Shown: one piece after another, positions 2,181-22,739 of the stretch
Layout of the letters: each line of letters starts with the position of its first letter
Numbering within the stretch: the stretch's first letter is position 1
Assembly: GCA_976226885.1 (NCBI GenBank)
Contig: OZ320316.1
Span: forward strand, 88,164,001 to 88,228,000
DNA from: Iphione sp. A-MEVVRFRX5
Taxonomy: Eukaryota
DNA length: 64,000 bases
Direction: 5' to 3'
Notes under the pieces: model-generated
The model's database searches: none
Told to the model about the DNA's origin: nothing
What the model saw: the letters and a program-made list of their open reading frames with translations, nothing else
Position numbers and translations under genes: made by a program

Positions 2181-2250
2181 ACACATACACACACAGAGAG
2201 AAAGAGAGAGAGAGAGAGTATGTATGTATGCATGTATGTATGTATGTATG
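2181..2250. repeat. Compound microsatellite (CA)n-(GA)n-(TATG)n inside MITE A
   Basis: Read directly. The (TATG)n part corresponds to the (TACA)n tract at ~22538-22570 in copy 2. Confidence 0.9.
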
Positions 2251-2388
2251 GAGGTCGAGGCATAGTTGTAGAAATTGAGCGCTTTTTTGTGGAGGTTGAG
2301 GCATATCAGTGGAGATTGTGTGGTTTTTCATTAAGGTTGGGGCATATCGGTGGAAATTGTGTGACTTTTCATGGAGGTCGAAGCATAA
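2251..2388. repeat. ~40-bp minisatellite (GGAGGTTGAGGCATATCAGTGGA...) internal to MITE A
   Basis: About 3.5 degenerate units, the reverse complement of the 40-bp units at 22331-22517. Confidence 0.8.
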
Positions 2389-11000: not shown

Positions 11001-11426
11001 CAGATGTGTAGATCAGTCTGGCCAAACAGGTCATTTGTAGCCAGCGCAAAAAGTCTCTCATATAATTTAATACAGCTGCTTATCATTACTTCGGGGGTTA
11101 TTAATTGCAGCTAAAGGGCATCATGTGCCAGACACTAATGATTTAAGTGGTGCTTGACATGATGTAAATAGGGCAAACCTGTTCCAAACTACATACGGGT
11201 GGATATAGATTTAGGTCTTTGTCCTCTGCTTAGGGGCACCGAGTGATACCGGACTAAATTCGGCATGTACAGTGTATTGTAGCCGCTGCGTGCGGCTACA
11301 GCGATCCGGATCGTGCGGCTCCGGAGAGCCGCTTGGTGCTGAAGTAGGGAGCCGGATCGTGCGGCTACGGGGATCCGGATCGCTCGGCTTTGGGTTGGCC
11401 CTGGGGGGGAAGGAGTAGCACACTTG

Positions 11427-11434
11427 TATAAATA
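11427..11434 (+). promoter_or_regulatory. LTR TATA box (TATAAATA)
   Basis: Canonical TATA about 80 nt upstream of the poly(A) signal, consistent with a U3-R-U5 layout. Duplicated in the 3' LTR. Confidence 0.75.
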
Positions 11435-11505
11435 GGAGCCTCCCCCCAGGGCCCGGGGCAGTTGTTACCTGATACTCTTACTGTTCACTTCATATTTCTC
11501 TCAGC

Positions 11506-11511
11506 AATAAA
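11506..11511 (+). terminator. LTR polyadenylation signal AATAAA (functional copy expected in the 3' LTR, 20992-20997)
   Basis: Canonical hexamer followed by a TGTGTC/TGTCTT GU-rich downstream segment. Confidence 0.7.
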
Positions 11512-11534
11512 CCTCCTCTTCTATAACCTGTGTC

Positions 11535-13229
11535 ATGTCTTGGTTACGAAACGGCAAGCGCTACATTGGTGGCAGCGGTGGGATCTCGCCCCCTGCCGCT
11601 GGAGGTCGTCACTCCACCGGCCGTGGCTACCGGAGATTGGTAGGCCGCAGCCCTGGAGAGGAAGGTACACAGGGTGGAAGAGCACTGGAGGACATAGGCA
11701 GCTCCAGCTCCGATGGGGAAGTGGAGTTGATGCCGGATCGTGCGGCTCGGGGGAGCGCGCAACCCCAGGGGCCGCACCGCCGTCGCCGCTCCGGCTCTTC
11801 CACGGAGGAAGAAGACTGGGCAGACGCTGGGAGTGAAGAAGACGACACAGCCTCAGAGCAAGGGAGTGGCAGACCAAGCCGGAAAAGCCACGGCGTCCCA
11901 CCCCCGGGGCCGACCGGGGGCGCGTCGTCATTGTCAGGACAGCAACAGCATAGGTCGGGAGGAAGTGCCGGAACAGCCGGATTGGGGGCCCGTGCCGGAA
12001 CGTGCGGATCTGGGGCCCCGGCCACACCAGCCGGCTTGCGTGGAGGAGCCGGAACAGCCGGATCAGGGTCCCATGCCGGAACGTTCGGATCGGGGGACCG
12101 AGGAGTACCAGCCGGCTTGAGGGGAGGAGCCGGAACAGCCGGATCAGGGTCCCATGCCGGAACGTTCGGATCGGGAGACCATGCTGCACCAGTCAACCAG
12201 AATGGAGATGCTGGAACGTTCGGATTAGGGGAACATGCCGGATCAGCCGGCACAAGTGGGGATGCCGGCACAGGCGGATCTGATGGCAGGTCCACGGTCT
12301 CCTCGAGGTCCTCCACTGGGGATAGTGACCCGCATTCCACAGCGGATACGGTGCGGCAACTGGTTGCAGAATTGCAGTCTTCACTCCACCCCCCCCCTCC
12401 GCCCCGGAAGTTCCATGTCAAGCCCGAGACATTTGATGGTTCCGTCCCGCTGGCGGAGTACCTGCACCATTTTTCGCTAGTGGCCCAAGCCAACCGCTGG
12501 GACCGCGGCGAGCAAGCACTGCAGATCAGCGTGTGCCTGCGGAAGTCGGCGCAATCGGCGCTCCGTTCCGCGTCCTTGGACGTCAGCGCCCCGGGTGCCT
12601 TTGACAAAATTGTCGAAGTACTTCGACAGCGGTTCCAATCGGAAGACAGAGTCACGTACTACGAGCAGGAGTTGAAACAGCGCCGTCAGGCCAAGGACGA
12701 AGACGCGCAACGCCTAGCAGAAGAAATCGAGAGGCTAGTCCGCCAGGCGTACCCGGAGGCGGAGGGGGCGTGGCTCGATCGCATGTGCCGGGATGCGTTC
12801 GTGGCGGCACTGAGGGACGAGCGCAGCCGCCGTTGGGTAGTGCAAGCCAAGGCGCGATCGTTCCAATCGGCGATCTCGGAAGCATTGCTGGCGGAGTCGT
12901 ATCATAAGGCGGAGCGCGAGAGGGTCACCGCCCCGAGTACCGCGAGAGTGCACGCTGCGTCCGACCAAGAAGAGCAAGTTGCAGCTTCTCAGGCGGCGGC
13001 TCCCCCAGGAGGGCTTGAGCGCATTGAACAGCTGCTCCTAAAGTTGTTGGAGCGACCGCAACCCACCTCCGGGCGCCGAGGAGGTAAGAAGCAAGACAAC
13101 GACGGCTGCTTCTACTGTAAGCAGCCTGGCCATTTCAAGCGGGATTGCCCGGCCCGGCAAGCTGCTGAGAAGGAGAAGGCTTCGGAAGCTCAAGCGGAAA
13201 ACGCGAAGCCGCCCGCCCCGGCCCAGTAG
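11535..13229 (+). CDS. gag: Gag (564 aa): ~290-aa Gly/Ser/Ala-rich repetitive N-terminus, capsid domain and CCHC zinc knuckle
   Basis: Capsid-like KPETFDGSVPLAEYLHHFSLVAQANRW from ~12405 and CX2CX4HX4C (CFYCKQPGHFKRDC) at 13107-13148. The ATG lies within the LTR. Confidence 0.93.
   Translation: MSWLRNGKRYIGGSGGISPPAAGGRHSTGRGYRRLVGRSPGEEGTQGGRALEDIGSSSSDGEVELMPDRAARGSAQPQGPHRRRRSGSSTEEEDWADAGSEEDDTASEQGSGRPSRKSHGVPPPGPTGGASSLSGQQQHRSGGSAGTAGLGARAGTCGSGAPATPAGLRGGAGTAGSGSHAGTFGSGDRGVPAGLRGGAGTAGSGSHAGTFGSGDHAAPVNQNGDAGTFGLGEHAGSAGTSGDAGTGGSDGRSTVSSRSSTGDSDPHSTADTVRQLVAELQSSLHPPPPPRKFHVKPETFDGSVPLAEYLHHFSLVAQANRWDRGEQALQISVCLRKSAQSALRSASLDVSAPGAFDKIVEVLRQRFQSEDRVTYYEQELKQRRQAKDEDAQRLAEEIERLVRQAYPEAEGAWLDRMCRDAFVAALRDERSRRWVVQAKARSFQSAISEALLAESYHKAERERVTAPSTARVHAASDQEEQVAASQAAAPPGGLERIEQLLLKLLERPQPTSGRRGGKKQDNDGCFYCKQPGHFKRDCPARQAAEKEKASEAQAENAKPPAPAQ
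11567..11584 (+). other. Primer-binding site TGGTGGCAGCGGTGGGAT for tRNA-Leu (AAG/UAG isoacceptor)
   Basis: 18 nt starting 1 nt after the LTR end, complementary to the 3' end (...ATCCCACCGCTGCCACCA) of metazoan tRNA-Leu as I recall it. Confidence 0.9.
11966..12290 (+). repeat. Coding tandem repeats in the gag N-terminus (81-bp period, smaller AGT(A/F/C)GS sub-units)
   Basis: CCAGCCGGCTT occurs at 12027 and 12108 (81 bp apart). The peptide PAGLRGGAGTAGSGSHAGTFGSGD occurs twice. Confidence 0.85.
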
Positions 13230-13239
13230 GGCGGGCGGC
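13196..13239 (+). promoter_or_regulatory. -1 programmed ribosomal frameshift signal between gag and pol
   Basis: Slippery G_GAA_AAC (13196-13202), a 5-nt spacer, then a perfect 11-bp stem GCCGCCCGCCC (13208-13218) / GGGCGGGCGGC (13229-13239). The pol frame is -1 relative to gag and open from 13169. Confidence 0.8.
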
Positions 13240-13273
13240 ATCCGATCACTTCAGTCAACCCCTGCCCGAGCAT

Positions 13274-16200
13274 TTGGAGGTACTGGCGGCCTCCTTTGCG
13301 GGCCCGGGCCGGATAGAGCTTAAGGGCCATCGGAGGGCGGGGTGTCGCGGACTCCTGCTAGAGGGCCAAATAGCCGGGGTCCCTGTCGATTGGCTAGTGG
13401 ATACGGGAGCCTCGACATCGCTCCTGTCCACCCGAGTGTTCCGCCAGACCACGAACGTGAAGTTAGGGGCAGTGGACGTCCGAGTGGTGGGAGTGGACGG
13501 TGCCCCGCTTAAGGTGCATGGGACCATCGAGTGCGGGGTGGACTTTGGGCCGGTCACCCTGGCCGTCGCAGCCAAGGTAGTCGACATGGACGTCCCGGCC
13601 CTCTTGGGCCTCGACTGGCTGGACCAGATGGACGCTGCCGTGGATACACGCGGAGCGGTAGTGTCTGTAAGGGCACCCGGTGGTGATGCCCCGGTTGCAG
13701 TCAGTGCGGGCTGTGACCGTGTAGTGAGGGCAGGTAATGTGGAATTTGTGTGCGCCCAAGTACAAGGAGTAGCGGCGGGGGCCACAACCGGGGTCGTGGA
13801 GGCTAGCGTGCAGTTCGAAGAGAAGTCTGGACTGCGGGTAGCGCAAGCCATGGTGACCCCGAGGGCAGGCCGAGTTTGGGTTCCGGTGTGGAATCCGGGG
13901 TCGCAAGATCTTCAACTGTACAGAGGGACGCACCTGGGGAGATTCCAAGAGGTGGCGGTCGTGGGAGCCGAGGAGACCCCGTCCGGCCAGGCCTGGGAGG
14001 AGGAACAAGATTCGGCAGTCCAACAGCTCCTGGAGGGCCTTCCATCAGAGGTTGAAGGGGAAGAACGCGAAGAGATTGCCGAGATGTTACTCCGGAATCG
14101 GGCGGTGTTCCAAACATCATCCGGCCCCCTGGGATGCACACCCGAGGTGCAGCATCACATAGACACCCAAGGGCACCCTCCTATCCGCCAGAGAGCGCGG
14201 CGTCTACCTCCTCACAAGAGGGAAGCAGTCCAGAGGGAGGTAGAGCGGATGGTGGAAAAAGGGGTGCTGGAGCCCTCCTCCAGCCCGTGGGCGTCGCCCC
14301 TGGTCCTGGTACAGAAAAAGGACGGGGGGCTTCGGTTTTGCATCGACTACAGGCGCCTGAACGCGGTGACCAAGAAGGACGCCTTTCCCCTGCCCCGCAT
14401 CGATGACACCCTGGACGCGCTACAAGGCAGCCGGTATTTCTCAGCCATAGACCTGGCCAGTGGTTATTGGCAGGTGCGTATGGCCCCGCAGGACGCCGAG
14501 AAGACCGCAGTCTGCACCCCGGCAGGACTGTTCCAGTTCCGGGTGATGCCGTTCGGGCTGTGTAATGCCCCGTCCACATTCGAGCGGCTGATGGAGACAG
14601 TCCTGCGGGGCCTGGTGGGAACCGAGTGCCTGGTTTACCTGGACGACATCATTGTCCTCGGGCGCTCGGTCCCGGGAATGTGCCAACGGCTGGAGCGAGT
14701 CTTCGTCCGACTTCGTGAGGCAGGGCTGCACGTCAAGGCCAGCAAGTGCCAGCTGTTCAAGAAGGAGGTGTCATACCTGGGGCACCGTGTATCGGCGCAG
14801 GGGGTTGGAGTGGACCCCGAGAAGGTCGAGGCTATTACCGGCTGGCCTACACCACGCTGCGTCACCGAGGTTAAGAGCTTCCTCGGATTATGCTCCTATT
14901 ACCGGAACTTTGTCCGGGGGTTTGCAACAATAGCAGCCCCACTCCACGCTCTAGCAGAGAAGGGGGCAGAGTTCTGCTGGACGCAGGCGTGCCAGGCGGC
15001 CTTCGAGGTGTTGAAGAAGGAGCTCAGTAGCACCCCGGTGCTGGGGTTCCCAGATCCTGTGGGCCAGCTGATACTGGATACGGACGCTTCCGACACAGGT
15101 ATAGGAGCAGTGTTGTCCCAGGCCCAGCAAGGGCAAGAGAGGGTGTTGGCGTACGCGAGTCGCACGCTGTCCTGGCCGGAGCGTAATTACTGCGTCACAC
15201 GGCGCGAATTACTCGCTGTGGTATTTGCGCTGCGCAAGTTCCGTTGCTATGTGGGCGGGCGCACAGTGGAGATCCGGACAGATCACAATTCTCTACGGTG
15301 GCTGTGTGCGTTTAAGGAGCCCCAGGGCCAACTAGCCAGATGGCTTGAAGAGGTCTTCTGCCATGACATCAACATCGTGCACCGCCCGGGGCGACAGCAT
15401 GGGAATGCCGACGGGTTATCGCGGCAGGAGTGTAAACAGTGTGGACGCCGGGAGGAGGGCTCTTCGGGGGAGGAGCTGGCCGCAGCCGTCACGCTGGGTG
15501 AGGTGGAAGGAGTAGAGCGAGTAGGTGTGGCACAACGCGCCGAGCCGGCCACAGCAGAGATTATCCAGGCACTGGAGGCCGGGCAACCCCCACCAGGGTT
15601 ACGGGTGGGGCTTAGCTGGGAGGAGAGACAGCTACGCTCGGAAGCTCACCGGCTCCAACTACATAGGGGCGTACTCGCCAGGAGTTGGGAGGGTGAGGGA
15701 GGCACGTCTGTCCCTCAAGTGTACGTACCGGCCGCGCTACGACAGCCGCTTTGGCAGGAGACCCACGCGGGAGCGATGGGAGGCCACCTGGGCCCCGACA
15801 AGACCGGGGCATTAATCCGGATGCGCTGGTTTTGGCCGGGCCTGAGGAGAGACGTGGAGAGGTGGTCACGCTGCTGTCAAACCTGCCAACGGAGGAAGGG
15901 ACCAGGGAGGTCCCGAAGGGCCCCGCTGCAGGCCCGGCCGGTCTCGGAGCCCTGGGAGCTGGTGGCGGCCGACATATTGGGTCCCCTCCCGGTGACGAGC
16001 CGCGGAAATCGGTACATCCTGGTCGTGGCAGACCACTTTTCCAAGTGGACAGAGGCTTTCCCCTTAGAGGAGGCTACGGCGAAGGCGACAGCCGAAGTGA
16101 TCGTGCGGGAGGTGGTGTGCCGGTTCGGCCCCCCACGAGTCATTCACTCGGACCAAGGGCGGAACTTTGAGGCAGCACTATTTACGGAAGTGCTCCAACT

Positions 16201-19200
16201 ATTAGGTGTCGAGAAGTCTCGAACCACCCCCTACCACCCGCAGAGCGACGGAGTGGTAGAGCGGTTCAACCGGACACTGGGGAACATGCTGGCCTCCATG
16301 GCGGAAGAACGGCGGAAAGACTGGGATGAGGCCCTTCCCTTTGTGATGGCCGCATACCGGGCGACTCCACATACGGCCACAGGGGAGTCGCCCAACTGGC
16401 TCCTCTTTCATCGTGAGGTAAACCTACCGGTAGATCTGCGCTATGGACATCCGGGGCCGGACCCAGTGACTAGGGGCGCCTACGCGGACAAAGTGGCGAT
16501 GGAGGTGGGAGAGGCCCACCGTCGCGTGGCGGAGAGGCTGCGCCGGGTGGCAGCAGCCAGCAAGGACTGGTATGACCAAAAAGTGCGACGTCAAACTTAC
16601 GAGCCGGGAGAGCGCGTGTGGCTATTCTCACCACTCAGGAAGAAAGGGGTGTCCCCTAAGCTCCAGAGTTGGTGGGAGGGCCCTTGGTTGGTGGAGGACA
16701 AACTATCAGCCGTGGTCTACCGAGTGAGCCGGGGAGCCAAGAGGAGGGTGGTACATGCCGATCGACTGAAACCGGCATATTTGGATCCACAGGTGACGTG
16801 CCGCGTGGGGAGAATCGAGACCATTCACATCTCAGGAGCCGCGCCTGTTTCGCCGCGGCTGGGGGGCAGCCGCAGCGAGCGGTCTGTGGGAAGCCGCGCG
16901 GTGCGGCTACCCATAGCCGCATCAACCGAGCGGCGCGCCCGCGCCGCAGCGTGCGAACCCACAGAGGGCGCAGGAGCCGCGCCTGTTTCGCCGCGGCTGG
17001 GGGGCAGCCGCAGCGAGCGGTCTGTGGGAAGCCGCGCGGTGCGGCTACCCATAGCCGCATCAACTGAGCGGCGCGCCCGCGCCGCAGCGTGCGAACCCAC
17101 AGAGGGCGCCACTGCGTTTCAGCGGCGCCATCTCTTGGATTCTATAAAAGACGTCGATTCGCAGTGTCGACCTTCTGTCGCGCGGCTACCACACCACGAG
17201 GAACGACTTAAGCCTCCCAGACCCGCTCAGGACACCCTTGCCGAGCTCGCTACACCAGGAGCCACGAGGAATACCCTACCACGAGGACAGCCGCAGCGCG
17301 CATCGATCGAGTCGCCCGATTATTCTCAGGTGAGCAGCACTACGTGGAACGCTATGGGCGATAAAGGGGAGGTCGTCAAGCCGCGATGGGTTAACGGGCT
17401 GGGGAGAGCAGCAGCGGCACGGGTAGCTCAAATCCAATTTCCTATTGGTAAAAAGGGTACATCCAGTGCGGAACTTTTTGCATGGCGCCGAAAAACTGAC
17501 GGGAGCATGTCCTCTTCCGCAGCTCGAGCCGCGTGTCGCACCGGGGCACTGTGCAGCCGCCTCATCCCGATCCGCAGCGTAGGCATGGACGACGGGAAGC
17601 CGCAGCTTCCGACGGAGCCGCGCCCCGCGGCTGGAGACAAGCCGCCAGCAGCGGAGTCCGGGGAGCCGCGCCTTGCGGCTGGGGGAAAGCCGCCGCAGCA
17701 TCCTAGAGCCGCGACGCATGAAGAGCCGCGCCAACCAAGCGAGCCGCTGGGAGCGGCGCCGCCCCCCGTCGAGCCGCATGGTGCGGCTACCCACGAGCCG
17801 CACCGAGCGGATCGAGAGACCGAGGAGGACCGACCAGCTACCGGGGGTAGCCCCGGACCCGCCCCATCGTCACCCACGCAAGATCAGGACGAACATGAGG
17901 ACCCCAACGCCTCGCCTCGGGTGCACTGTACGCTGTGTAAGAAAAGATTCGTGCACCAATCCAACCTCAATCGGCACTTGCGTGATGTGCACGAACAGCA
18001 GGGTTTCGGATGGCTGTGCCCGGACCAGGACTGTGGGAGCCAGGGTTTCCATAGGAGAGGCGATTGGAAGCGCCACCTGAGCCAGGTCCATGGGAACCTG
18101 GGCTGGGCCCACACGGTGGACATACAGTTTTTGAAGTTTCGGGGCCTTAACCCTACTCGGGCCAGGGCGCAGGAGTGCCCCGAGTCGCTCCTACCCCAGC
18201 TGGAGAAGGTGCGGAAACAAGAAAAGCGTAGCCGGCGCCGCGACCTCAAGAAAATGATTGGCGAGGGAACATCGGGCGCAGGATCTTCCGACTTGGAGGT
18301 GCCTTGTCAACCACCGGGCACCTCCCCCGCCGGTCCCTCTGCATCCGCGCCGGCGGTCCCGTCACCGTCGCCGTCGACTGCGGCCCCGCCGGCGGTCCCG
18401 GAGGGACGACCGCAGCCCCCCCCGGCCGTCCCCTCCACCAGCACCGGAAAGACGGCATCGCGACGGGCCCGCCGCCGTCCAGATCTGCCGTTGCCACCGA
18501 GTTCGTCCGAAGAGGGGACGCCTGAGCCACCCCCACCCCGTCGTCGTTCCTCCCGTCAGGCGACGCGTGGGCGGAAGGGCCCTCGCACGCCCAGTGTCTC
18601 GCCAGGCAGCGCTGTCCCCTCGACGTCGGGGTCCGATGGACCGCCGGGTGGGGACGAACCTCTTCCCCATCGGGACACCCCGGAGCGACCCCCTTCTGCC
18701 CCGGCCGAGACGCAAGGGTCAGCCCCGCCCCCTTCACGCTATGCGCAGGGCACCCCAGCTAAGACATACGAGAGGAAACGCCCGGCGGAGTGGACCCCTC
18801 CAAGGCCTGCCCAGCCTGTATTCCGTGCCCCGGCGGTTCCCTCAGCACTGATAGACCTTCCAGTGTCGCAGACGGCATACCGGGGCCGCCGACTCTTCGT
18901 GGGGGACCACGAGGAGCGCCTGGATGAGGGGGCGGACACAGCTCTCATGAGCCCGGCCGACATAGAGTGGGCACCGGGGACGTCGGACTGGAGCAGCACA
19001 ACGTCCCATTCCGCCGCACCGACGTCTCCTCGAGGTCCCACACCCTCTGTGGGAAGGGGCCTAGGAGGTGGGCGCGCGACGTTCCGAGCCCCGGCCGGGA
19101 CATACGACAGACCACCCCTGCGGCTTCCGGCGCCGGGCAAATGGCCTTCGCAGCGACAAGGGCCAGAGACCGAGCGCAGAGAGGCTGAGCTCGACCGACG

Positions 19201-20620
19201 CTTGGGACCGGAGTGGTCGCGCCCAGAGGCCGTGGAGACGGTGGTGCTGACTGACTCCCCCGACCGCAGTCCGTCACCCAAGCGTCCACGAGGGCAGCAG
19301 GAGCCGGAGACCGGTGGAGCGGGCACGGCACCGCCAGCTCCCGCAGGAAAGGGTGACCCCGGCCCCACCGACATCCTGGCCCAAGCTATGGAGGAGTCCC
19401 TGGGACGGTACCTCCCGGGGACATCCTCCAGCTCCGACGCCGGCGACCTGGCCGAGATCTTCCAGGAAGACGACGAGGAGATCCCCACCACGCCCGGGGG
19501 AGCCCGACCTGCCTCGGCCCCGGGGTCTCGGCCCTTGGGTAACCCTGCAGGGAAGCAGCTCCCTCCCCAACCCGAGGTGCCGGCCGACAAGAGTCAACCT
19601 GTCGACAGGGCGGGAGAGCCGGTGCCGCCGCCGCCTCGCAGCGACTCCCAAGCCGAGCAGCAGCCTGCCGACCCTGGGGCGCCCAAGGAGGACGCACCGG
19701 AAGTACCGCCGCCACGCGGGGACGCCCAGCCCAGCCTGCCGCCGCAGCCTGCCCCTGTGTTGGTAACAGAGGGCGTGGCGACGGAAACCGGGGACGTGCC
19801 ACTGACACCCGCCCCCGGCCCCAAAGTCGTAGGTACGGTGGACCGTGCAAGAGAAGACGCGGCGACGGGAACCGAGGACATACCACTGGCACCCGCCCCC
19901 GGCCCCAAAGTCGTAGGAACGGTGGACCGTGCTCTGTCACCCTTTCCTCCCCCGCTTGCACCTCGGGAGGATGCGACCACACAGACTCCAGTGGGAGAGG
20001 AGCCGGACAACCGCCGGTCCGCACCGGGACCGATGGATACCCCACCCCGTCACTCCACACCTGGGGGGAGGGGGACCGGAGCTCAAGACGACGCCGGAAC
20101 GACCACCACGGTGAACCGTCCTCGCCTCCCGTCACCCTGGGCCAGGGTGCCACCCACGCCGCCACGGGCAGGCCCCTCCGGGCCCCACACACGAGCCGGA
20201 CAGCCGAGGACCGGCACCCCACTGCACTCACCCCCGGTGTTGGATGTATCAGGACCGGCGGCGGCCGATGAAGCAGTACCAGCCGAAGTCCACGTCTGGG
20301 CCGCCGCACGCCTGGTCAGCGCGGAGACCAAGGCACCCACGGGCTGGGAAGTACGCGATGCGACGGCGGCCCTGGACCTGCAGGTCCTCACCCAGGGCCA
20401 GGTTAAAGTCACTCTGAACCAGACCATCCGGTTCAGGCGCTTGGGCCCCCCTGTCGCAGGAACCGAACTGGCTCGCTGGCATGCCACCCACGGCACGGTG
20501 CTCACCCGGGGGCGACCGGTTCTCCGGATGCATTCCTGGAGGGAGAACCCGGTCGCCCCGGGAGAAGTGGAGATAATCGTCAAAGAACTTTGGACGGTGT
20601 TTACGGACACCGCCCAATAG
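13274..20620 (+). CDS. pol: Pol polyprotein (PR, RT, RNase H, IN) with a ~1,280-aa in-frame C-terminal extension. The frame is open from 13169 and is probably entered by frameshift rather than at the TTG.
   Basis: PR LVDTGA (D at 13400); RT YLDD (14636-14647); RNase H DTDAS/ELLAV/RTDH/NADGLSR (~15070-15425); IN HHCC from 15764, D..D(35)E and GPY/F-like EGPW..VVHADRLKP ending ~16774. No stop codon until 20618-20620. Confidence 0.97.
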   Translation: MEVLAASFAGPGRIELKGHRRAGCRGLLLEGQIAGVPVDWLVDTGASTSLLSTRVFRQTTNVKLGAVDVRVVGVDGAPLKVHGTIECGVDFGPVTLAVAAKVVDMDVPALLGLDWLDQMDAAVDTRGAVVSVRAPGGDAPVAVSAGCDRVVRAGNVEFVCAQVQGVAAGATTGVVEASVQFEEKSGLRVAQAMVTPRAGRVWVPVWNPGSQDLQLYRGTHLGRFQEVAVVGAEETPSGQAWEEEQDSAVQQLLEGLPSEVEGEEREEIAEMLLRNRAVFQTSSGPLGCTPEVQHHIDTQGHPPIRQRARRLPPHKREAVQREVERMVEKGVLEPSSSPWASPLVLVQKKDGGLRFCIDYRRLNAVTKKDAFPLPRIDDTLDALQGSRYFSAIDLASGYWQVRMAPQDAEKTAVCTPAGLFQFRVMPFGLCNAPSTFERLMETVLRGLVGTECLVYLDDIIVLGRSVPGMCQRLERVFVRLREAGLHVKASKCQLFKKEVSYLGHRVSAQGVGVDPEKVEAITGWPTPRCVTEVKSFLGLCSYYRNFVRGFATIAAPLHALAEKGAEFCWTQACQAAFEVLKKELSSTPVLGFPDPVGQLILDTDASDTGIGAVLSQAQQGQERVLAYASRTLSWPERNYCVTRRELLAVVFALRKFRCYVGGRTVEIRTDHNSLRWLCAFKEPQGQLARWLEEVFCHDINIVHRPGRQHGNADGLSRQECKQCGRREEGSSGEELAAAVTLGEVEGVERVGVAQRAEPATAEIIQALEAGQPPPGLRVGLSWEERQLRSEAHRLQLHRGVLARSWEGEGGTSVPQVYVPAALRQPLWQETHAGAMGGHLGPDKTGALIRMRWFWPGLRRDVERWSRCCQTCQRRKGPGRSRRAPLQARPVSEPWELVAADILGPLPVTSRGNRYILVVADHFSKWTEAFPLEEATAKATAEVIVREVVCRFGPPRVIHSDQGRNFEAALFTEVLQLLGVEKSRTTPYHPQSDGVVERFNRTLGNMLASMAEERRKDWDEALPFVMAAYRATPHTATGESPNWLLFHREVNLPVDLRYGHPGPDPVTRGAYADKVAMEVGEAHRRVAERLRRVAAASKDWYDQKVRRQTYEPGERVWLFSPLRKKGVSPKLQSWWEGPWLVEDKLSAVVYRVSRGAKRRVVHADRLKPAYLDPQVTCRVGRIETIHISGAAPVSPRLGGSRSERSVGSRAVRLPIAASTERRARAAACEPTEGAGAAPVSPRLGGSRSERSVGSRAVRLPIAASTERRARAAACEPTEGATAFQRRHLLDSIKDVDSQCRPSVARLPHHEERLKPPRPAQDTLAELATPGATRNTLPRGQPQRASIESPDYSQVSSTTWNAMGDKGEVVKPRWVNGLGRAAAARVAQIQFPIGKKGTSSAELFAWRRKTDGSMSSSAARAACRTGALCSRLIPIRSVGMDDGKPQLPTEPRPAAGDKPPAAESGEPRLAAGGKPPQHPRAATHEEPRQPSEPLGAAPPPVEPHGAATHEPHRADRETEEDRPATGGSPGPAPSSPTQDQDEHEDPNASPRVHCTLCKKRFVHQSNLNRHLRDVHEQQGFGWLCPDQDCGSQGFHRRGDWKRHLSQVHGNLGWAHTVDIQFLKFRGLNPTRARAQECPESLLPQLEKVRKQEKRSRRRDLKKMIGEGTSGAGSSDLEVPCQPPGTSPAGPSASAPAVPSPSPSTAAPPAVPEGRPQPPPAVPSTSTGKTASRRARRRPDLPLPPSSSEEGTPEPPPPRRRSSRQATRGRKGPRTPSVSPGSAVPSTSGSDGPPGGDEPLPHRDTPERPPSAPAETQGSAPPPSRYAQGTPAKTYERKRPAEWTPPRPAQPVFRAPAVPSALIDLPVSQTAYRGRRLFVGDHEERLDEGADTALMSPADIEWAPGTSDWSSTTSHSAAPTSPRGPTPSVGRGLGGGRATFRAPAGTYDRPPLRLPAPGKWPSQRQGPETERREAELDRRLGPEWSRPEAVETVVLTDSPDRSPSPKRPRGQQEPETGGAGTAPPAPAGKGDPGPTDILAQAMEESLGRYLPGTSSSSDAGDLAEIFQEDDEEIPTTPGGARPASAPGSRPLGNPAGKQLPPQPEVPADKSQPVDRAGEPVPPPPRSDSQAEQQPADPGAPKEDAPEVPPPRGDAQPSLPPQPAPVLVTEGVATETGDVPLTPAPGPKVVGTVDRAREDAATGTEDIPLAPAPGPKVVGTVDRALSPFPPPLAPREDATTQTPVGEEPDNRRSAPGPMDTPPRHSTPGGRGTGAQDDAGTTTTVNRPRLPSPWARVPPTPPRAGPSGPHTRAGQPRTGTPLHSPPVLDVSGPAAADEAVPAEVHVWAAARLVSAETKAPTGWEVRDATAALDLQVLTQGQVKVTLNQTIRFRRLGPPVAGTELARWHATHGTVLTRGRPVLRMHSWRENPVAPGEVEIIVKELWTVFTDTAQ
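16833..17108 (+). repeat. Tandem duplication of 138 bp (46 codons) just after integrase
   Basis: 16833-16970 and 16971-17108 differ at a single synonymous site (ACC/ACT). Confidence 0.95.
17927..18091 (+). other. Two tandem C2H2 zinc fingers within the Pol extension
   Basis: CTLCKKRFVHQSNLNRHLRDVH (C-x2-C-x12-H-x4-H, 17927-17992) and CPDQDCGSQGFHRRGDWKRHLSQVH (C-x4-C-x13-H-x4-H, 18017-18091), with the usual F and hydrophobic helix positions and an 8-aa linker. Confidence 0.9.
19777..19932 (+). repeat. 84-bp-period coding duplication (PL(T/A)PAPGPKVVGTVDRA x2)
   Basis: Units start at 19777 and 19861 and are more diverged than the 138-bp pair. Confidence 0.9.
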
Positions 20621-20750
20621 GAGTTTACCACTTCCCCTTCAAACAAGGGACTACCGTTATGGTTATCTTTGCGGACGTTGGATTTTAGTGTTTGACATTA
20701 CTCGTTGGACAGTTTTTTTGTTAGCCTTGCGCTTGGGTCAAGCGCAGTCT

Positions 20751-20763
20751 GAAGGGGGAATAG
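20751..20763 (+). other. Polypurine tract GAAGGGGGAA(TAG)
   Basis: Purine run immediately upstream of the 3' LTR TG at 20764. Confidence 0.9.
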
Positions 20764-21051
20764 TGTAGCCGCTGCGTGCGGCTACAGCGATCCGGATCGT
20801 GCGGCTCCGGAGAGCCGCTTGGTGCTGAAGTAGGGAGCCGGATCGTGCGGCTACGGGGATCCGGATCGCTCGGCTTTGGGTTGGCCCTGGGGGGGAAGGA
20901 GTAGCACACTTGTATAAATAGGAGCCTCCCCCCAGGGCCCGGGGCAGTTGTTACCTGATACTCTTACTGTTCACTTCATATTTCTCTCAGCAATAAACCT
21001 CCTCTTCTATAACCTGTGTCATGTCTTGGTTACGAAACGGCAAGCGCTACA
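20764..21051 (+). repeat. 3' LTR (288 bp)
   Basis: Matches 11278-11565 base for base by eye and is followed by the GTAT TSD. Confidence 0.97.
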
Positions 21052-22002
21052 GTATCAATTTGTATCGTCGGAAGTGTCAATATCCCCACACGCTTGCACA
21101 CAAACACACACACATAGATATACACATATACATATGTTATGGGTCTCCTATGATCAATGAACCCATAAACTACACACCAACTGTATCTATGCTGCCTTTG
21201 GACATTCGCTGCGGACGCCCAGCTACTGACTTCAAAACTGCTATCCACTCCAGCTTCTTTACGGAATACACACAGGTTTGTCATATTCCTGCTTTATCTC
21301 CTGAACATTGATTTTATTTTGCACATTTTCACGTGAATACTTTCCTGCTATTCACATACCTTACGTTCGCAAATATAAGGATCGAAAACCCCGAGTTCTC
21401 GTGTGAGTTGTATTACTCGGTGCCAGCGCCATACATTAACGTTGTCATCTAAAAGACTGGTTGATCGCTAATACCCTCCCGGCCACATAGGGGAGAAGAC
21501 ATGTTATTTCAGTAGTGTGTATTCCTCCCAAAATCTGCAATACTCTTCTTTGGACAGTTGGGATAGTGATCATGTCTTATCTAGGTCCTCTTCTTAACAT
21601 GTACTGGAAGGGGGAGGGAGTAGTTTAGGCAGCTTTACATTTTCACGCATTCGGTTATGTAGGTTCAACCTATGGGACAAACCCGAGACAGATATTTACT
21701 TTGTCCCTACACATGCGTGAAGACATAATACATACAGATGTGTATCCATGGTGATGATCTAACTTCCATGTTTTTTACTGGATATGGGTGCATAAACATA
21801 ATGGCTTTCAACCAAGAGCCATAGCAGTTCAGAACATTGTGTATAAGTTATATTATGGAAATTCGTCCATTTTAGACATATGGATACGTTTCTAGGGCAC
21901 TCAATATGAGTACATGGGAGAGCCAGCATAATGATGGCTTATTTTTGTTTGCTGACTATAAGATACTCACATGATCAGGGGTACAGTTTTTTGATTGACT
22001 AA

Positions 22003-22739
22003 GGCCGGCTTTCCATGCATATGGAAATGACCTCTGGAGCATGGAGCCTGCACTCCAGAAAAAAATGATCTGAGACACCTTGCTTGAGGGCTTTCCATGG
22101 ACTCAGGTCTGTGGATCCATGGTCCAGGTCTGTGGGCCGAAAACGAACCTGGGCCATAAATTTACACATTTTCCGGACTATGGATACCCCCACAGACCAG
22201 TAGGATAGAGAGATGGATGTTATCAGCTGGATAGGCACTGTCTATCTCATTATATATAATGTGAGATATTTTCTAATTTGCATATCATTTGTGTAAAACC
22301 TGCACAATCGCCACAAAAAAGAATGCAAAACTTTCACCAATCTGCTTCGATCCCCACAAAAAACACACAATTTTCACTGATATGCTTCAACCTCCACAAA
22401 AAACGCACCATTTTCACTGATATGCTTCAACCTCCACAAAAAACGCACCATTTTCACTGATATGCTTCAACCTCCACAAAAAAGCACCATTTTCACCAGT
22501 ATGCTTCAATCTCCATAACCTCATAAACTTATAGACTACATACATACATGTACATACATACACATACCTGGCACAAATGTACATGCATAGTCACATGCAT
22601 ACCAGTCCATGTCCATCTGGAAGTCAGCCCATTTTCCATATACCTGGAAAGTACCAGTCTGAAGAGTCCAAAAAATCGGCCGAATTTCCTGAGGGACTAT
22701 GCTGTGCAGAGAAATCTCCGGATGCATGGAAAGCTGGCC
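22003..22739 (+). mobile_element. Non-autonomous PIF/Harbinger-like MITE (family A, copy 2; uninterrupted, 737 bp)
   Basis: TIRs GGCCGGCTTTCCATGCAT and (reverse complement) GGCCAGCTTTCCATGCAT, 17/18 match. Perfect TAA TSD at 22000-22002 and 22740-22742. No coding capacity. Confidence 0.85.
22331..22517. repeat. 40-bp minisatellite (TTTTCACTGATATGCTTCAACCTCCACAAAAAACGCACCA), ~4.5 copies, inside MITE A
   Basis: Identical units at 22371-22410 and 22411-22450, with degenerate flanking units. Confidence 0.9.

What the first reader, a model, noticed from the sequence alone, without database searches (positions are those of the whole stretch)
16775..20620. Gypsy retrotransposon whose Pol carries a ~1,280-aa transcription-factor-like extension with tandem C2H2 zinc fingers
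Seen in sequence: after the integrase end motif (VVHADRLKP, ~16774) the frame stays open for ~3.85 kb, about 40% of the element. It encodes two well-formed C2H2 fingers (17927-18091), a basic helix (LEKVRKQEKRSRRRDLKK), a long Pro/Ser/acidic low-complexity region and a compact terminal domain. There is no signal peptide, TM helix or furin site (so not env) and no chromodomain. With the -1 frameshift the full product would be ~3,030 aa. Established: Gypsy integrases normally end shortly after the GPY/F region or add a chromodomain, and complex retroviruses encode trans-activators. Inference: this is a captured or evolved accessory module (trans-activator, anti-silencing factor or integration-targeting tether) kept intact in a very young element. 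I do not recognise this architecture, but I cannot confirm novelty without a search.
Basis: partly seen in the sequence, partly recalled or inferred. Interest (0 to 1): 0.92.

Follow-up and report, generated by a model that had tools for sequence, protein, structure and literature searches.

The report
Gypsy retrotransposon with zinc-finger Pol tail
A very young Gypsy-type jumping gene carries a real, evolutionarily conserved 1,280-residue tail with two DNA-binding-type zinc fingers fused to its integrase. The same module recurs across a small, apparently undescribed clade of related elements, so it is an accessory part of the element and not a one-off accident.

Summary
Window 11278-21051 is a complete 9,774-bp LTR retrotransposon: identical 288-bp LTRs, GTAT target duplication, gag, and pol in the -1 frame. 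After the integrase ends at 16774, the pol frame stays open to 20620. It has no stops in about 1,280 codons, against 21-24 in each other frame.

The tail holds a tandem C2H2 finger pair (17927-18091), a basic helix, long Pro/Ser/acidic low-complexity sequence and a small beta-rich end domain.

It is not a one-off host capture. A 12-member clade of GC-rich Gypsy elements (bootstrap about 80%) carries the same finger pair downstream of integrase in every member where that region is held. It is fused in frame in six lineages and forms a free-standing ORF3 in this element's two nearest relatives. In a sister lineage, five intact copies give tail pN/pS of 0.28-0.36.

Outside the fingers the tail evolves fast and has no detectable homologue among 1.84 billion representative proteins.

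My best reading is a nuclear nucleic-acid-binding accessory module travelling with integrase, most likely for integration targeting (about 40%). A trans-acting regulator is the main rival. I rate it a new variant of a known kind, of moderate to high interest. I could not search Repbase, Dfam or GyDB.

The parts
11274..11277 (+). Target-site duplication, left copy (GTAT)
   Evidence: The same 4 nt lie directly outside both LTRs.
11278..11565 (+). 5' LTR, 288 bp, TG..CA ends. TATA-like box at 11427 and AATAAA at 11506. U3 carries 3 copies of CGTGCGGCT.
   Evidence: 288/288 identical to the 3' LTR. Motif counts.
11567..11584 (+). Primer-binding-site-like sequence starting TGG, one base after the LTR
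   Evidence: Read directly from the sequence. The matching tRNA was not identified.
11535..13229 (+). gag ORF (564 aa as listed). It has a CCHC knuckle near the C-terminus and an in-frame 81-bp x3.4 repeat at 11967-12242. The first ATG lies inside the LTR, so the true start is uncertain.
   Evidence: (zf-CCHC, E 3.4e-6).
13169..16774 (+). pol core (PR, RT, RNase H, integrase). The frame is open from 13169, is -1 relative to gag, and overlaps gag by 61 nt.
   Evidence: Pfam domains in order. Frame geometry.
16775..20620 (+). In-frame post-integrase extension, ~1,280 aa including the stop codon. This is the finding.
   Evidence: No stops, against 21-24 in each other frame. Homologous module in relatives.
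16833..17108 (+). In-frame tandem duplication, 138 bp x2 (46 codons each), 99% identical
16892..17812 (+). Cluster of 7 copies of the dyad motif AGCCGC-N5-GCGGCT (up to 1 mismatch) inside the coding linker upstream of the fingers. The same motif occurs twice in each LTR's U3.
   Evidence: 11 matches in the window, all in the element, 0.07 expected. The motif falls in different reading frames. It is absent from all 45 relatives' loci.
17927..18091 (+). Tandem C2H2 zinc-finger pair, the only part conserved across the clade. The linker carries G-[WY]-x-C-P.
18200..18253 (+). Basic helix / NLS-like cluster after the fingers
   Evidence: Sequence. AlphaFold2 predicts a helix at pLDDT 66-71.
18314..20218 (+). 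Long Pro/Ser/Gly/acidic low-complexity region with further basic clusters. Includes an in-frame 84-bp x2 repeat at 19765-19932.
   Evidence: Composition profile. Repeats. No Pfam family.
20219..20617 (+). C-terminal hydrophobic, beta-rich domain (aa 2316-2448), unassigned
   Evidence: AlphaFold2 pLDDT 60.7. No PDB sequence hit. No significant Foldseek match in PDB or BFVD.
20751..20763 (+). Polypurine tract directly upstream of the 3' LTR
   Evidence: Read from the sequence.
20764..21051 (+). 3' LTR
21052..21055 (+). Target-site duplication, right copy (GTAT)

Best explanation
Shown by the evidence: the 3.85-kb stretch is a genuine protein-coding part of pol. It is this family's version of an accessory module that defines a small clade of GC-rich animal-type Ty3/Gypsy elements. 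The module has three parts: a tandem C2H2 finger pair followed by a basic helix, several hundred fast-evolving and probably disordered Pro/Ser/acidic residues with NLS-like basic clusters, and a small C-terminal domain.

Inferred from the reading frames: in this element the module is made only when the ribosome shifts from gag into pol, and it leaves the ribosome attached to the C-terminus of integrase.

Inferred mechanism (about 40% likely): the tail travels with integrase inside the particle and the pre-integration complex. It supplies nuclear-import signals and a short-sequence DNA-binding (or chromatin-contact) surface that biases where the cDNA is inserted. This would be the role the chromodomain plays in chromoviruses and that C-terminal integrase tails play in yeast Ty elements. 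Where the module is a separate ORF3, it would have to join the complex non-covalently.
For: Coding and selected:
- No stops in ~1,280 codons, against 21-24 in each other frame.
- Six independent lineages keep Pol and tail as one ORF of 2,172-2,636 aa: this element, P0066, P0175, P0075, P0076 and P0191.
- Five distinct intact 2,315-aa copies exist in the P0066 lineage. Their tail pN/pS is 0.28-0.36, with binomial P of 6e-4 to 8e-3 against neutrality. The Pol core gives 0.04-0.16.

Homologous module:
- hhalign of this tail against the P0075/76 and P0066/175 tails hits only the finger pair, with probability 97% and 89%.
- Seven of the eight zinc ligands, plus the G, P, R and D positions, are invariant columns.
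- The signature is present in every clade locus that reaches that region, and in none of the 34 other Gypsy loci scanned.
- Clade support is 78-84%.

DNA-binding type: the fingers match solved DNA-binding tandem C2H2 fingers.

Position: the module is fused directly after the integrase C-terminal SH3-like domain, which is where chromodomains sit in chromoviruses (my own knowledge). By parsimony on the tree, the fused state is ancestral: one fission against two fusions.
Against: - The two nearest relatives encode the module as a separate ORF3, after a non-coding spacer in L044 (1.3 kb). That arrangement fits a trans-acting protein at least as well as an integrase tether.
- Only one insertion of this family is visible, so target preference is untested. 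The GTAT site looks unremarkable.
- Two fingers specify only about 6 bp.
- Pfam scores the fingers below its threshold, and the second finger is modelled at low confidence.
- Selection was measured in a sister lineage, not in this family, because no other copy of this family was found.
- Outside the fingers there is no significant similarity between sublineages. The C-terminal motif test failed, with 540 of 2,000 shuffles scoring at least as high.
Confidence: 0.4

Rival explanations
1. Trans-acting nuclear regulator. The finger module is released from Pol by the element's protease, or made from a subgenomic message. It then acts as a transcription activator or anti-silencing factor on the element's own LTR, as complex retroviruses do with their trans-activators.
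For: - In the nearest relatives the module is a free-standing ORF3 whose Met lies about 10 aa before finger 1.
- ORF3s of LTR retrotransposons are typically expressed from spliced messages (PMC5408684).
- The tail has the acidic/Pro-rich and basic stretches typical of activators.
- The dyad motif AGCCGC-N5-GCGGCT occurs twice in each U3 and seven times just upstream of the finger-coding region. It occurs nowhere else in 64 kb.
Against: - Six lineages keep the in-frame fusion to integrase. That is an odd way to make a regulator, because Pol is made in small amounts and is packaged.
- No relative carries the dyad motif.
- The internal motif cluster may simply reflect local duplications of a repeat unit.
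- There is no homology to any known trans-activator.
Confidence: 0.27
2. RNA-binding or particle-assembly helper. The fingers and basic clusters bind the element's RNA or cDNA, acting in packaging, chaperoning or reverse-transcription support rather than on chromosomal DNA.
For: Some C2H2 fingers bind RNA (my own knowledge). The tail is rich in Arg and in disordered segments. As a Pol fusion it would be delivered into the particle. The dyad motif can form a 6-bp stem with a 5-nt loop in the genomic RNA.
Against: gag already carries a CCHC knuckle for that role. The best structural matches of the fingers are DNA-binding factors. The dyad motif is not conserved in relatives.
Confidence: 0.1
3. 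Selectively neutral open frame. A GC-rich 3' region happens to lack stops and is translated, or not, without function.
For: The region is 64-70% GC, which lowers stop frequency. Long antisense ORFs of 283 and 307 aa also exist here. Most of the tail is low complexity and diverges very fast: 25% identity where the Pol core keeps 69%. The tail takes most of the amino-acid changes between near-identical copies.
Against: - The other frames have 21-24 stops.
- Six lineages keep 990-1,440-codon tails open.
- Tail pN/pS is 0.28-0.36, significantly below 1.
- Zinc ligands are kept between elements whose Pol cores are only about 44% identical.
Confidence: 0.06
4. One-off transduced host gene fragment, such as part of a cellular zinc-finger transcription factor, captured by this copy or family.
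For: All outside hits are cellular C2H2 proteins.
Against: Those hits cover only about 60 aa at 29-42% identity. Nothing matches the other ~1,200 aa among 1.84 billion representatives. The module is shared, at the same position, by relatives with 43-57% Pol identity.
Confidence: 0.03

Closest known systems
Chromoviruses (Ty3/Gypsy elements with a chromodomain at the integrase C-terminus)
   Same: An extra nucleic-acid- or chromatin-contact module is fused in frame directly after the integrase C-terminal domain. It is conserved across a clade and is thought to guide integration (PMC2864245 and PMC3605345 abstracts; function from my own knowledge).
   Different: No chromodomain is present. Here the module is a C2H2 pair inside a ~1,280-aa, mostly disordered tail, about 20 times longer. 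In sister elements it is a separate ORF.
ORF3-bearing LTR retrotransposons of bdelloid rotifers (Rodriguez, Kenefick and Arkhipova 2017, PMC5408684)
   Same: Additional coding modules are acquired downstream of pol in a modular, lineage-specific way. ORF3s are usually expressed from spliced messages. The two nearest relatives of this element have just such an ORF3.
   Different: The rotifer ORF3 types are env-like, GDSL esterase, DEDDy exonuclease, coiled-coil and TM proteins. The paper contains no mention of 'zinc finger' or 'C2H2'. Here the module is mostly fused to Pol.
Orchid Ty3/Gypsy elements with an acquired m6A RNA demethylase domain (PMC9289625)
   Same: A rare fixation of an additional conserved protein domain in Gypsy elements (abstract).
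   Different: That case is a plant lineage with an enzymatic domain and no zinc fingers.
Trans-activators of complex retroviruses (for example foamy-virus Tas with its internal promoter); from my own knowledge
   Same: A nuclear DNA-binding accessory protein is encoded 3' of pol. There is a possible parallel in the motif shared between U3 and an internal region.
   Different: There is no sequence or fold similarity. There is no evidence of a subgenomic message. The motif is not conserved in relatives.
Site-specific non-LTR retrotransposons with N-terminal C2H2/Myb DNA-binding motifs (R2 type), and engineered integrase-zinc-finger fusions; from my own knowledge
   Same: Element-encoded or fused zinc fingers are used to choose the DNA target.
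   Different: R2 belongs to a different element class and uses a different mechanism. The integrase fusions are artificial. No natural LTR-element case turned up in my literature searches.

Membership tests
Ty3/Gypsy (Metaviridae-type) LTR retrotransposon | Direct LTRs with TG..CA ends, a short target-site duplication, and a PBS and PPT next to the LTRs | tested here: met
   288-bp LTRs 100% identical, GTAT duplication, TGG-starting PBS-like site and purine tract.
Ty3/Gypsy (Metaviridae-type) LTR retrotransposon | gag with a CCHC knuckle; pol in the order PR-RT-RNase H-IN | tested here: met
   Pfam hits in that order, E 1e-9 to 1e-33. Nearest proteins are Gypsy Pols.
Chromovirus | Chromodomain (PF00385) after the integrase | tested here: not met
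   No chromodomain hit in the extension at E up to 0.1.
Errantivirus / env-bearing Gypsy | Third ORF encoding a glycoprotein with a signal peptide, a transmembrane anchor and a cleavage site | tested here: not met
   No TM-like hydrophobic run of 15 or more residues. Hydrophobic fraction is at most 0.33. No env family found. Four R-x-K/R-R motifs lie in basic clusters only.
Classical C2H2 zinc finger (tandem) | C-x2-4-C-x12-H-x3-5-H spacing with a hydrophobic core, two units joined by a short linker | tested here: met
   Spacing read from the sequence. Both fingers align to solved ZBTB17 fingers, E 1.3e-4. The 40 library hits are all C2H2 proteins.
Classical C2H2 zinc finger (tandem) | Score above Pfam's curated threshold for zf-C2H2 | tested here: not met
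   19.0 bits against a cut-off of 25.2. The Pfam threshold alone would not call it.
Classical C2H2 zinc finger (tandem) | Beta-beta-alpha fold of each finger | tested here: inconclusive
   In the single-sequence AlphaFold2 model, finger 1 forms beta-beta-alpha at pLDDT 60-74, while finger 2 is below 50.
The finger-tail Gypsy clade defined here (P0066, P0175, P0075, P0076, P0191, P0180, P0212, P0206 and allies) | Pol core groups with these elements in a tree | tested here: met
   NJ on 810-841 columns. The window groups with P0212 and P0206 at 100/100, and the 12-member clade is supported at 78-80/100. An earlier 6-member version gave 168/200.
The finger-tail Gypsy clade defined here (P0066, P0175, P0075, P0076, P0191, P0180, P0212, P0206 and allies) | C2H2 pair with a G-[WYF]-x-C-P-type linker downstream of integrase, fused or as ORF3 | tested here: met
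   hhalign probability 89-97%. The strict signature is found only in the clade loci held at that point and the window, and in none of 34 other Gypsy loci. Looser versions occur in L044 ORF3, L045 and P0191.
Transduced host gene | A cellular gene more similar to the insert than any element-borne relative, along most of its length | tested here: not met
   Nothing beyond the ~60-aa fingers among 1.84 billion representatives, and nothing among long proteins.
Retroviral-type trans-activator | Expression from a subgenomic or internal-promoter transcript and activation of the element's own LTR | not testable with these tools
   No expression data are available. The only hint is a motif shared by U3 and the internal region.

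The most novel reading that the evidence does not exclude
The element encodes its own sequence-specific DNA-binding factor with matching sites in its own DNA. The dyad motif AGCCGC-N5-GCGGCT lies twice in U3 and seven times in the ~1 kb just upstream of the finger-coding region. This would make a self-contained regulatory circuit in an LTR retrotransposon: LTR plus an internal control region, analogous to the foamy-virus Tas and internal-promoter arrangement. Alternatively, the fingers would be a natural, programmable integrase tether. The fused and split ORF3 forms in sister elements would then be two solutions to the same function.
Probability: 0.12. Interest if true: 0.82.

Novelty: new variant of a known kind. 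Interest (0 to 1): 0.62.

Why it matters
LTR retrotransposons rarely fix extra protein modules, and the known cases (chromodomain, env, dUTPase, extra RNase H, a few enzymes) have each revealed how an element copes with its host. A conserved C2H2 finger pair attached to integrase would be a natural counterpart of the engineered integrase-zinc-finger fusions built to steer integration. The split and fused forms in sister elements offer a natural comparison of the two arrangements. The finding also shows that this group of animal Gypsy elements has a modular post-integrase slot: finger tails, Macro plus CCCH tails, and shorter finger tails all occur there. Gene predictors currently label these as 'uncharacterized protein'. 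The practical limit is that function is inferred only from position, conservation and fold type.

Tried and rejected
Searches and tests that led nowhere:
- Extension against long proteins: no hit.
- Extension (1,199 aa) against 1.84 billion representatives: only generic C2H2 hits on the fingers. No donor gene and no family copy.
- Two JGI metagenome scans. The extension found no relative. The Pol core found 34 loci, all at 47% identity or less and none with the finger signature.
- C-terminal domain: no PDB sequence hit at E up to 10. The AlphaFold2 model scored pLDDT 60.7. Foldseek against PDB and BFVD gave nothing at E 0.001 or better, with TM-scores of 0.42 or less. It remains unassigned.
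- A C-terminal motif shared by P0066, P0175, P0075 and P0076 looked by eye to recur in the window's tail. An HMM test was not significant, with 540 of 2,000 shuffles scoring at least as high. I dropped the claim.
- AlphaFold2 on the finger region: low confidence (47.9), so no fold search was run.
- General sharing of 9-mers between LTR and pre-finger regions, in the window and six relatives: no consistent enrichment over Pol-core controls; L001 and L043 alone exceeded theirs, and the window fell below its own. Only the specific dyad motif stands out.
- Antisense ORFs of 283 and 307 aa inside the extension, and the other tail segments: no Pfam family. I treat them as by-products of high GC.
- Rfam and tRNA scans of the window found nothing, so the host organism stays unidentified. 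There is no flank similarity to any fetched locus.
- Literature searches for a natural integrase-C2H2 fusion, or for Macro-domain Gypsy elements, found nothing. Sample identifiers were not found in any paper.

Rejected readings: env (no signal peptide or TM), chromovirus (no chromodomain), chance ORF, one-off capture.

Declared slip: while reasoning about helix positions I wrote from memory a stretch of about 20 residues of a textbook mammalian zinc-finger protein.

Unused tool output: align_proteins printed a consensus line by itself.
Full report
**1. What is at the coordinates**

The window has a GC-rich island (62-70% GC) in a background of about 43% GC. Two 288-bp direct repeats at 11278-11565 and 20764-21051 are identical. 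They begin TG and end CA, and are flanked by the same four bases, GTAT. A TGG-starting primer-binding-like site and a purine tract sit inside them. Together these make a complete 9,774-bp LTR retrotransposon that inserted very recently.

It has a gag ORF (11535-13229, with a CCHC knuckle) and one 2,448-codon ORF (13274-20620). That ORF is open from 13169, lies in the -1 frame relative to gag, and overlaps gag by 61 nt. Pfam finds protease, RT, RNase H, the integrase zinc-binding domain, the integrase core and the integrase C-terminal domain in that order. The last ends at residue 1167, which is nt 16774.

**2.

From 16775 the frame stays open for about 1,280 codons. The other two forward frames of the same stretch carry 21-24 stops each. 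At that stop density an open frame of this length is expected with a probability of about e^-22 (my estimate). The extension is 39% of the element.

Its composition is 15% Pro, 12% Ala, 10% Arg, 9% Gly and 8% Ser. Hydrophobic islands occur only at about aa 1356-1430, 1536-1650, 1836-1875 and 2316-2448. Two internal tandem duplications are both in frame: 138 bp x2 at 99% identity, and 84 bp x2.

Pfam alone would not call them (19 bits against a 25.2-bit cut-off). But both align to solved tandem C2H2 fingers (ZBTB17, E 1.3e-4). In a scan of 1.84 billion representative proteins, all 40 significant hits are C2H2 proteins matching just this stretch.

There is no chromodomain, no env family and no TM-like segment. 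One small correction: four minimal R-x-K/R-R motifs do occur in the basic clusters.

**3. The module belongs to a clade**

A Pol-core search found relatives at only 43-50% identity. Three of them, from metagenome contigs about one element long, also carry 990-1,150-residue tails after integrase: P0066, P0075 and P0076. BLASTP aligned the finger region of each to the window's.

Profile-profile comparison of whole tails hits the finger pair and nothing else, at probability 97% and 89%. In a five-sequence alignment, seven of the eight zinc ligands are invariant, and so are G and P in the linker and R and D in finger 2. The eighth ligand is present in every sequence but offset by its spacing.

A profile search then recovered closer Pol relatives that the length filter had hidden: P0212 (57% identity) and P0206 (51%).

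Neighbour-joining trees on 810-841 columns place the window with P0212 and P0206 at 100/100. These three sit in a 12-member clade with P0066, P0061, P0089, P0175, P0176, P0075, P0076, P0180 and P0191, supported at 78-80/100. The internal nodes are at 98-100.

Every member whose sequence reaches that region has the finger pair downstream of integrase:
- **Fused in frame:** the window, P0066 (five intact copies), P0175, P0075, P0076 and P0191.
- **Interrupted copies:** the L004 copy has the tail in another frame (one frame change), while its cluster-mate P0175 is uninterrupted. The tail of L045 is split into four ORFs at 3x read coverage.
- **Split form:** in L043 and L044, the window's nearest relatives, pol stops just after integrase. 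A separate ORF3 begins with a Met about 10 residues before finger 1. In L044 that ORF is a 1,040-codon open stretch lying behind a 1.3-kb, 45%-GC spacer with 20-27 stops per frame. It matches the window's fingers and a short motif after them (29% identity over 94 aa, pairwise E 4e-6). In L043 the ORF lies about 5 kb downstream, behind tandem-repeat sequence, and has a single finger.

None of 34 other Gypsy loci from metagenomes has the signature.

On the tree the split form is confined to one subclade. Fusion is therefore the more parsimonious ancestral state: one change against two (inference).

**4. Selection**

No second copy of the window's own family was found anywhere.

Three of the five intact P0066-type copies, from three different samples, differ at 22-37 sites in the tail. 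Tail pN/pS is 0.28-0.36, with binomial P of 6e-4 to 8e-3 against neutrality. The Pol core gives 0.04-0.16. Most amino-acid differences fall in the tail.

Between the P0066 and P0175 lineages the Pol core keeps 69% identity. The tail keeps only 25%, yet remains collinear over about 950 residues (E 6e-27).

The tail is therefore under purifying selection, but much weaker than on Pol. It behaves like a disordered region with conserved islands.

**5. What could not be assigned**

The C-terminal domain has no sequence relative in the PDB. Its single-sequence model is beta-rich at pLDDT 60.7. It has no significant fold match in PDB or BFVD.

A C-terminal motif shared by four relatives looked similar by eye to the window's. 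It failed a shuffle test, so I make no claim. The finger-region model is too weak to use.

**6. Mechanism**

Shown: this is a coding, conserved, finger-bearing module placed after integrase.

Inferred from the frames: here it is translated as part of Gag-Pol.

The function is also inferred.
- **Integrase-associated nuclear module that biases integration (about 40%).** Six lineages keep the covalent link. The position is the one used by chromodomains. A Pol fusion is delivered into the particle rather than into the nucleus of the producing cell.
- **Trans-acting regulator (about 27%).** This is favoured by the free-standing ORF3 of the nearest relatives, by the activator-like composition, and by a curious DNA motif. 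AGCCGC-N5-GCGGCT (up to 1 mismatch) occurs 11 times in the window, with 0.07 expected. All copies are in the element: two in each U3 and seven within 16892-17812, just upstream of the finger codons. They fall in different reading frames.
- **Caveat on the motif.** It is absent from all relatives. Part of the internal cluster may come from local duplication. I treat it as a lead, not as evidence.
- **Other readings.** An RNA-binding helper, a neutral open frame, a one-off capture and env are ranked lower, for the reasons given under the rival explanations.

**7. Comparison with what is known**

The element passes the tests for a Ty3/Gypsy element. It fails those for a chromovirus or an env-bearing element (see the membership table).

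The nearest concepts are as follows:
- chromoviruses;
- the varied ORF3s captured by rotifer LTR elements, none of which is a zinc finger (PMC5408684);
- the orchid Gypsy demethylase domain (PMC9289625);
- retroviral trans-activators, R2-type finger-guided elements and engineered integrase-finger fusions, all three from my own knowledge.

Five literature searches found no natural LTR-element integrase-C2H2 architecture. I could not query Repbase, Dfam or GyDB, so prior cataloguing cannot be excluded.

**8. Verdict**

The feature is a lineage-conserved accessory module, not a capture. I rate it a new variant of a known kind, with interest 0.62.

Declared slip: in my reasoning I once wrote from memory a short stretch of a textbook mammalian zinc finger to index helix positions. 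The consensus line printed by the alignment tool was not used.

Noticed in passing
window 11281-11366, 20767-20852 and 16892-17812: The dyad motif AGCCGC-N5-GCGGCT (up to 1 mismatch) occurs 11 times, all in the element: two per LTR U3 and seven clustered in the coding linker just upstream of the fingers, in different reading frames. About 0.07 are expected in the window. It is absent from all 45 fetched relatives' loci.
   Followed up: partly
P0108 and P0077 (relatives), residues after integrase: Another subgroup of the same Gypsy assemblage carries a Macro domain plus a CCCH zinc finger after integrase. Pfam Macro scores 22.1 and 23.5 bits against a cut-off of 22. I found no paper describing this.
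   Followed up: partly
P0081, P0083, P0102, P0105, P0117, P0082, P0094: A further subgroup, outside the 12-member clade, has 190-390-aa post-integrase tails with a different finger arrangement: C2HC plus C2H2, sometimes with two more C2H2 at the end. They also have conserved flanking motifs. Whether these are homologous to the window's fingers was not tested.
   Followed up: no
window 11278-21051 against its flanks; L001-L008, L043, L045: The element is 62-70% GC in a genome of about 43% GC. The other long-tail clade members are 60-64% GC. L043 runs 53-59% GC through gag-pol (up to 75% in its repeat-rich ORF3) in flanks of about 40% GC. A strong, clade-wide compositional offset from the host is unexplained.
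   Followed up: no
window 11535-11565 and 21021-21051: The first ATG of the gag ORF lies inside the LTR, so the same ATG and the first 10 codons are also present in the 3' LTR. The real gag start may be further downstream. The gag N-terminal half also holds an in-frame 81-bp x3.4 repeat at 11967-12242.
   Followed up: no
window 2248-2387 and 22311-22515: Two arrays of a 40-41-bp tandem repeat look like the same unit in opposite orientation. The second lies 1.3 kb downstream of the element. This is probably a host satellite or a MITE-like repeat.
   Followed up: no
L043 16951-17850 and L044 13604-14332: The free-standing ORF3s of the two nearest relatives are filled with short-period in-frame tandem repeats (9/12/21/30 nt and 18 nt). 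These give runs of peptide repeats rich in Ala-Pro-Glu or in Ser-Gly-His.
   Followed up: partly
L002 824-2173 and L006 178-1158 (gag of the P0066 lineage): The gag products get faint to weak SCAN-domain hits. This is in line with the known descent of the vertebrate SCAN domain from a Gypsy capsid (my own knowledge).
   Followed up: no
P0077: A 1,826-aa Gypsy Pol with a Macro tail is labelled in NCBI as a DDE integrase of Klebsiella pneumoniae, on a 6-kb contig. This is most likely eukaryotic contamination of a bacterial assembly.
   Followed up: no
P0001-P0048: Many top hits from Cordylochernes scorpioides and several fish are gene models of 2,400-4,500 aa. At least some contain two Pol copies, for example P0001. 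Their lengths come from chimeric models, not from true long tails.
   Followed up: partly
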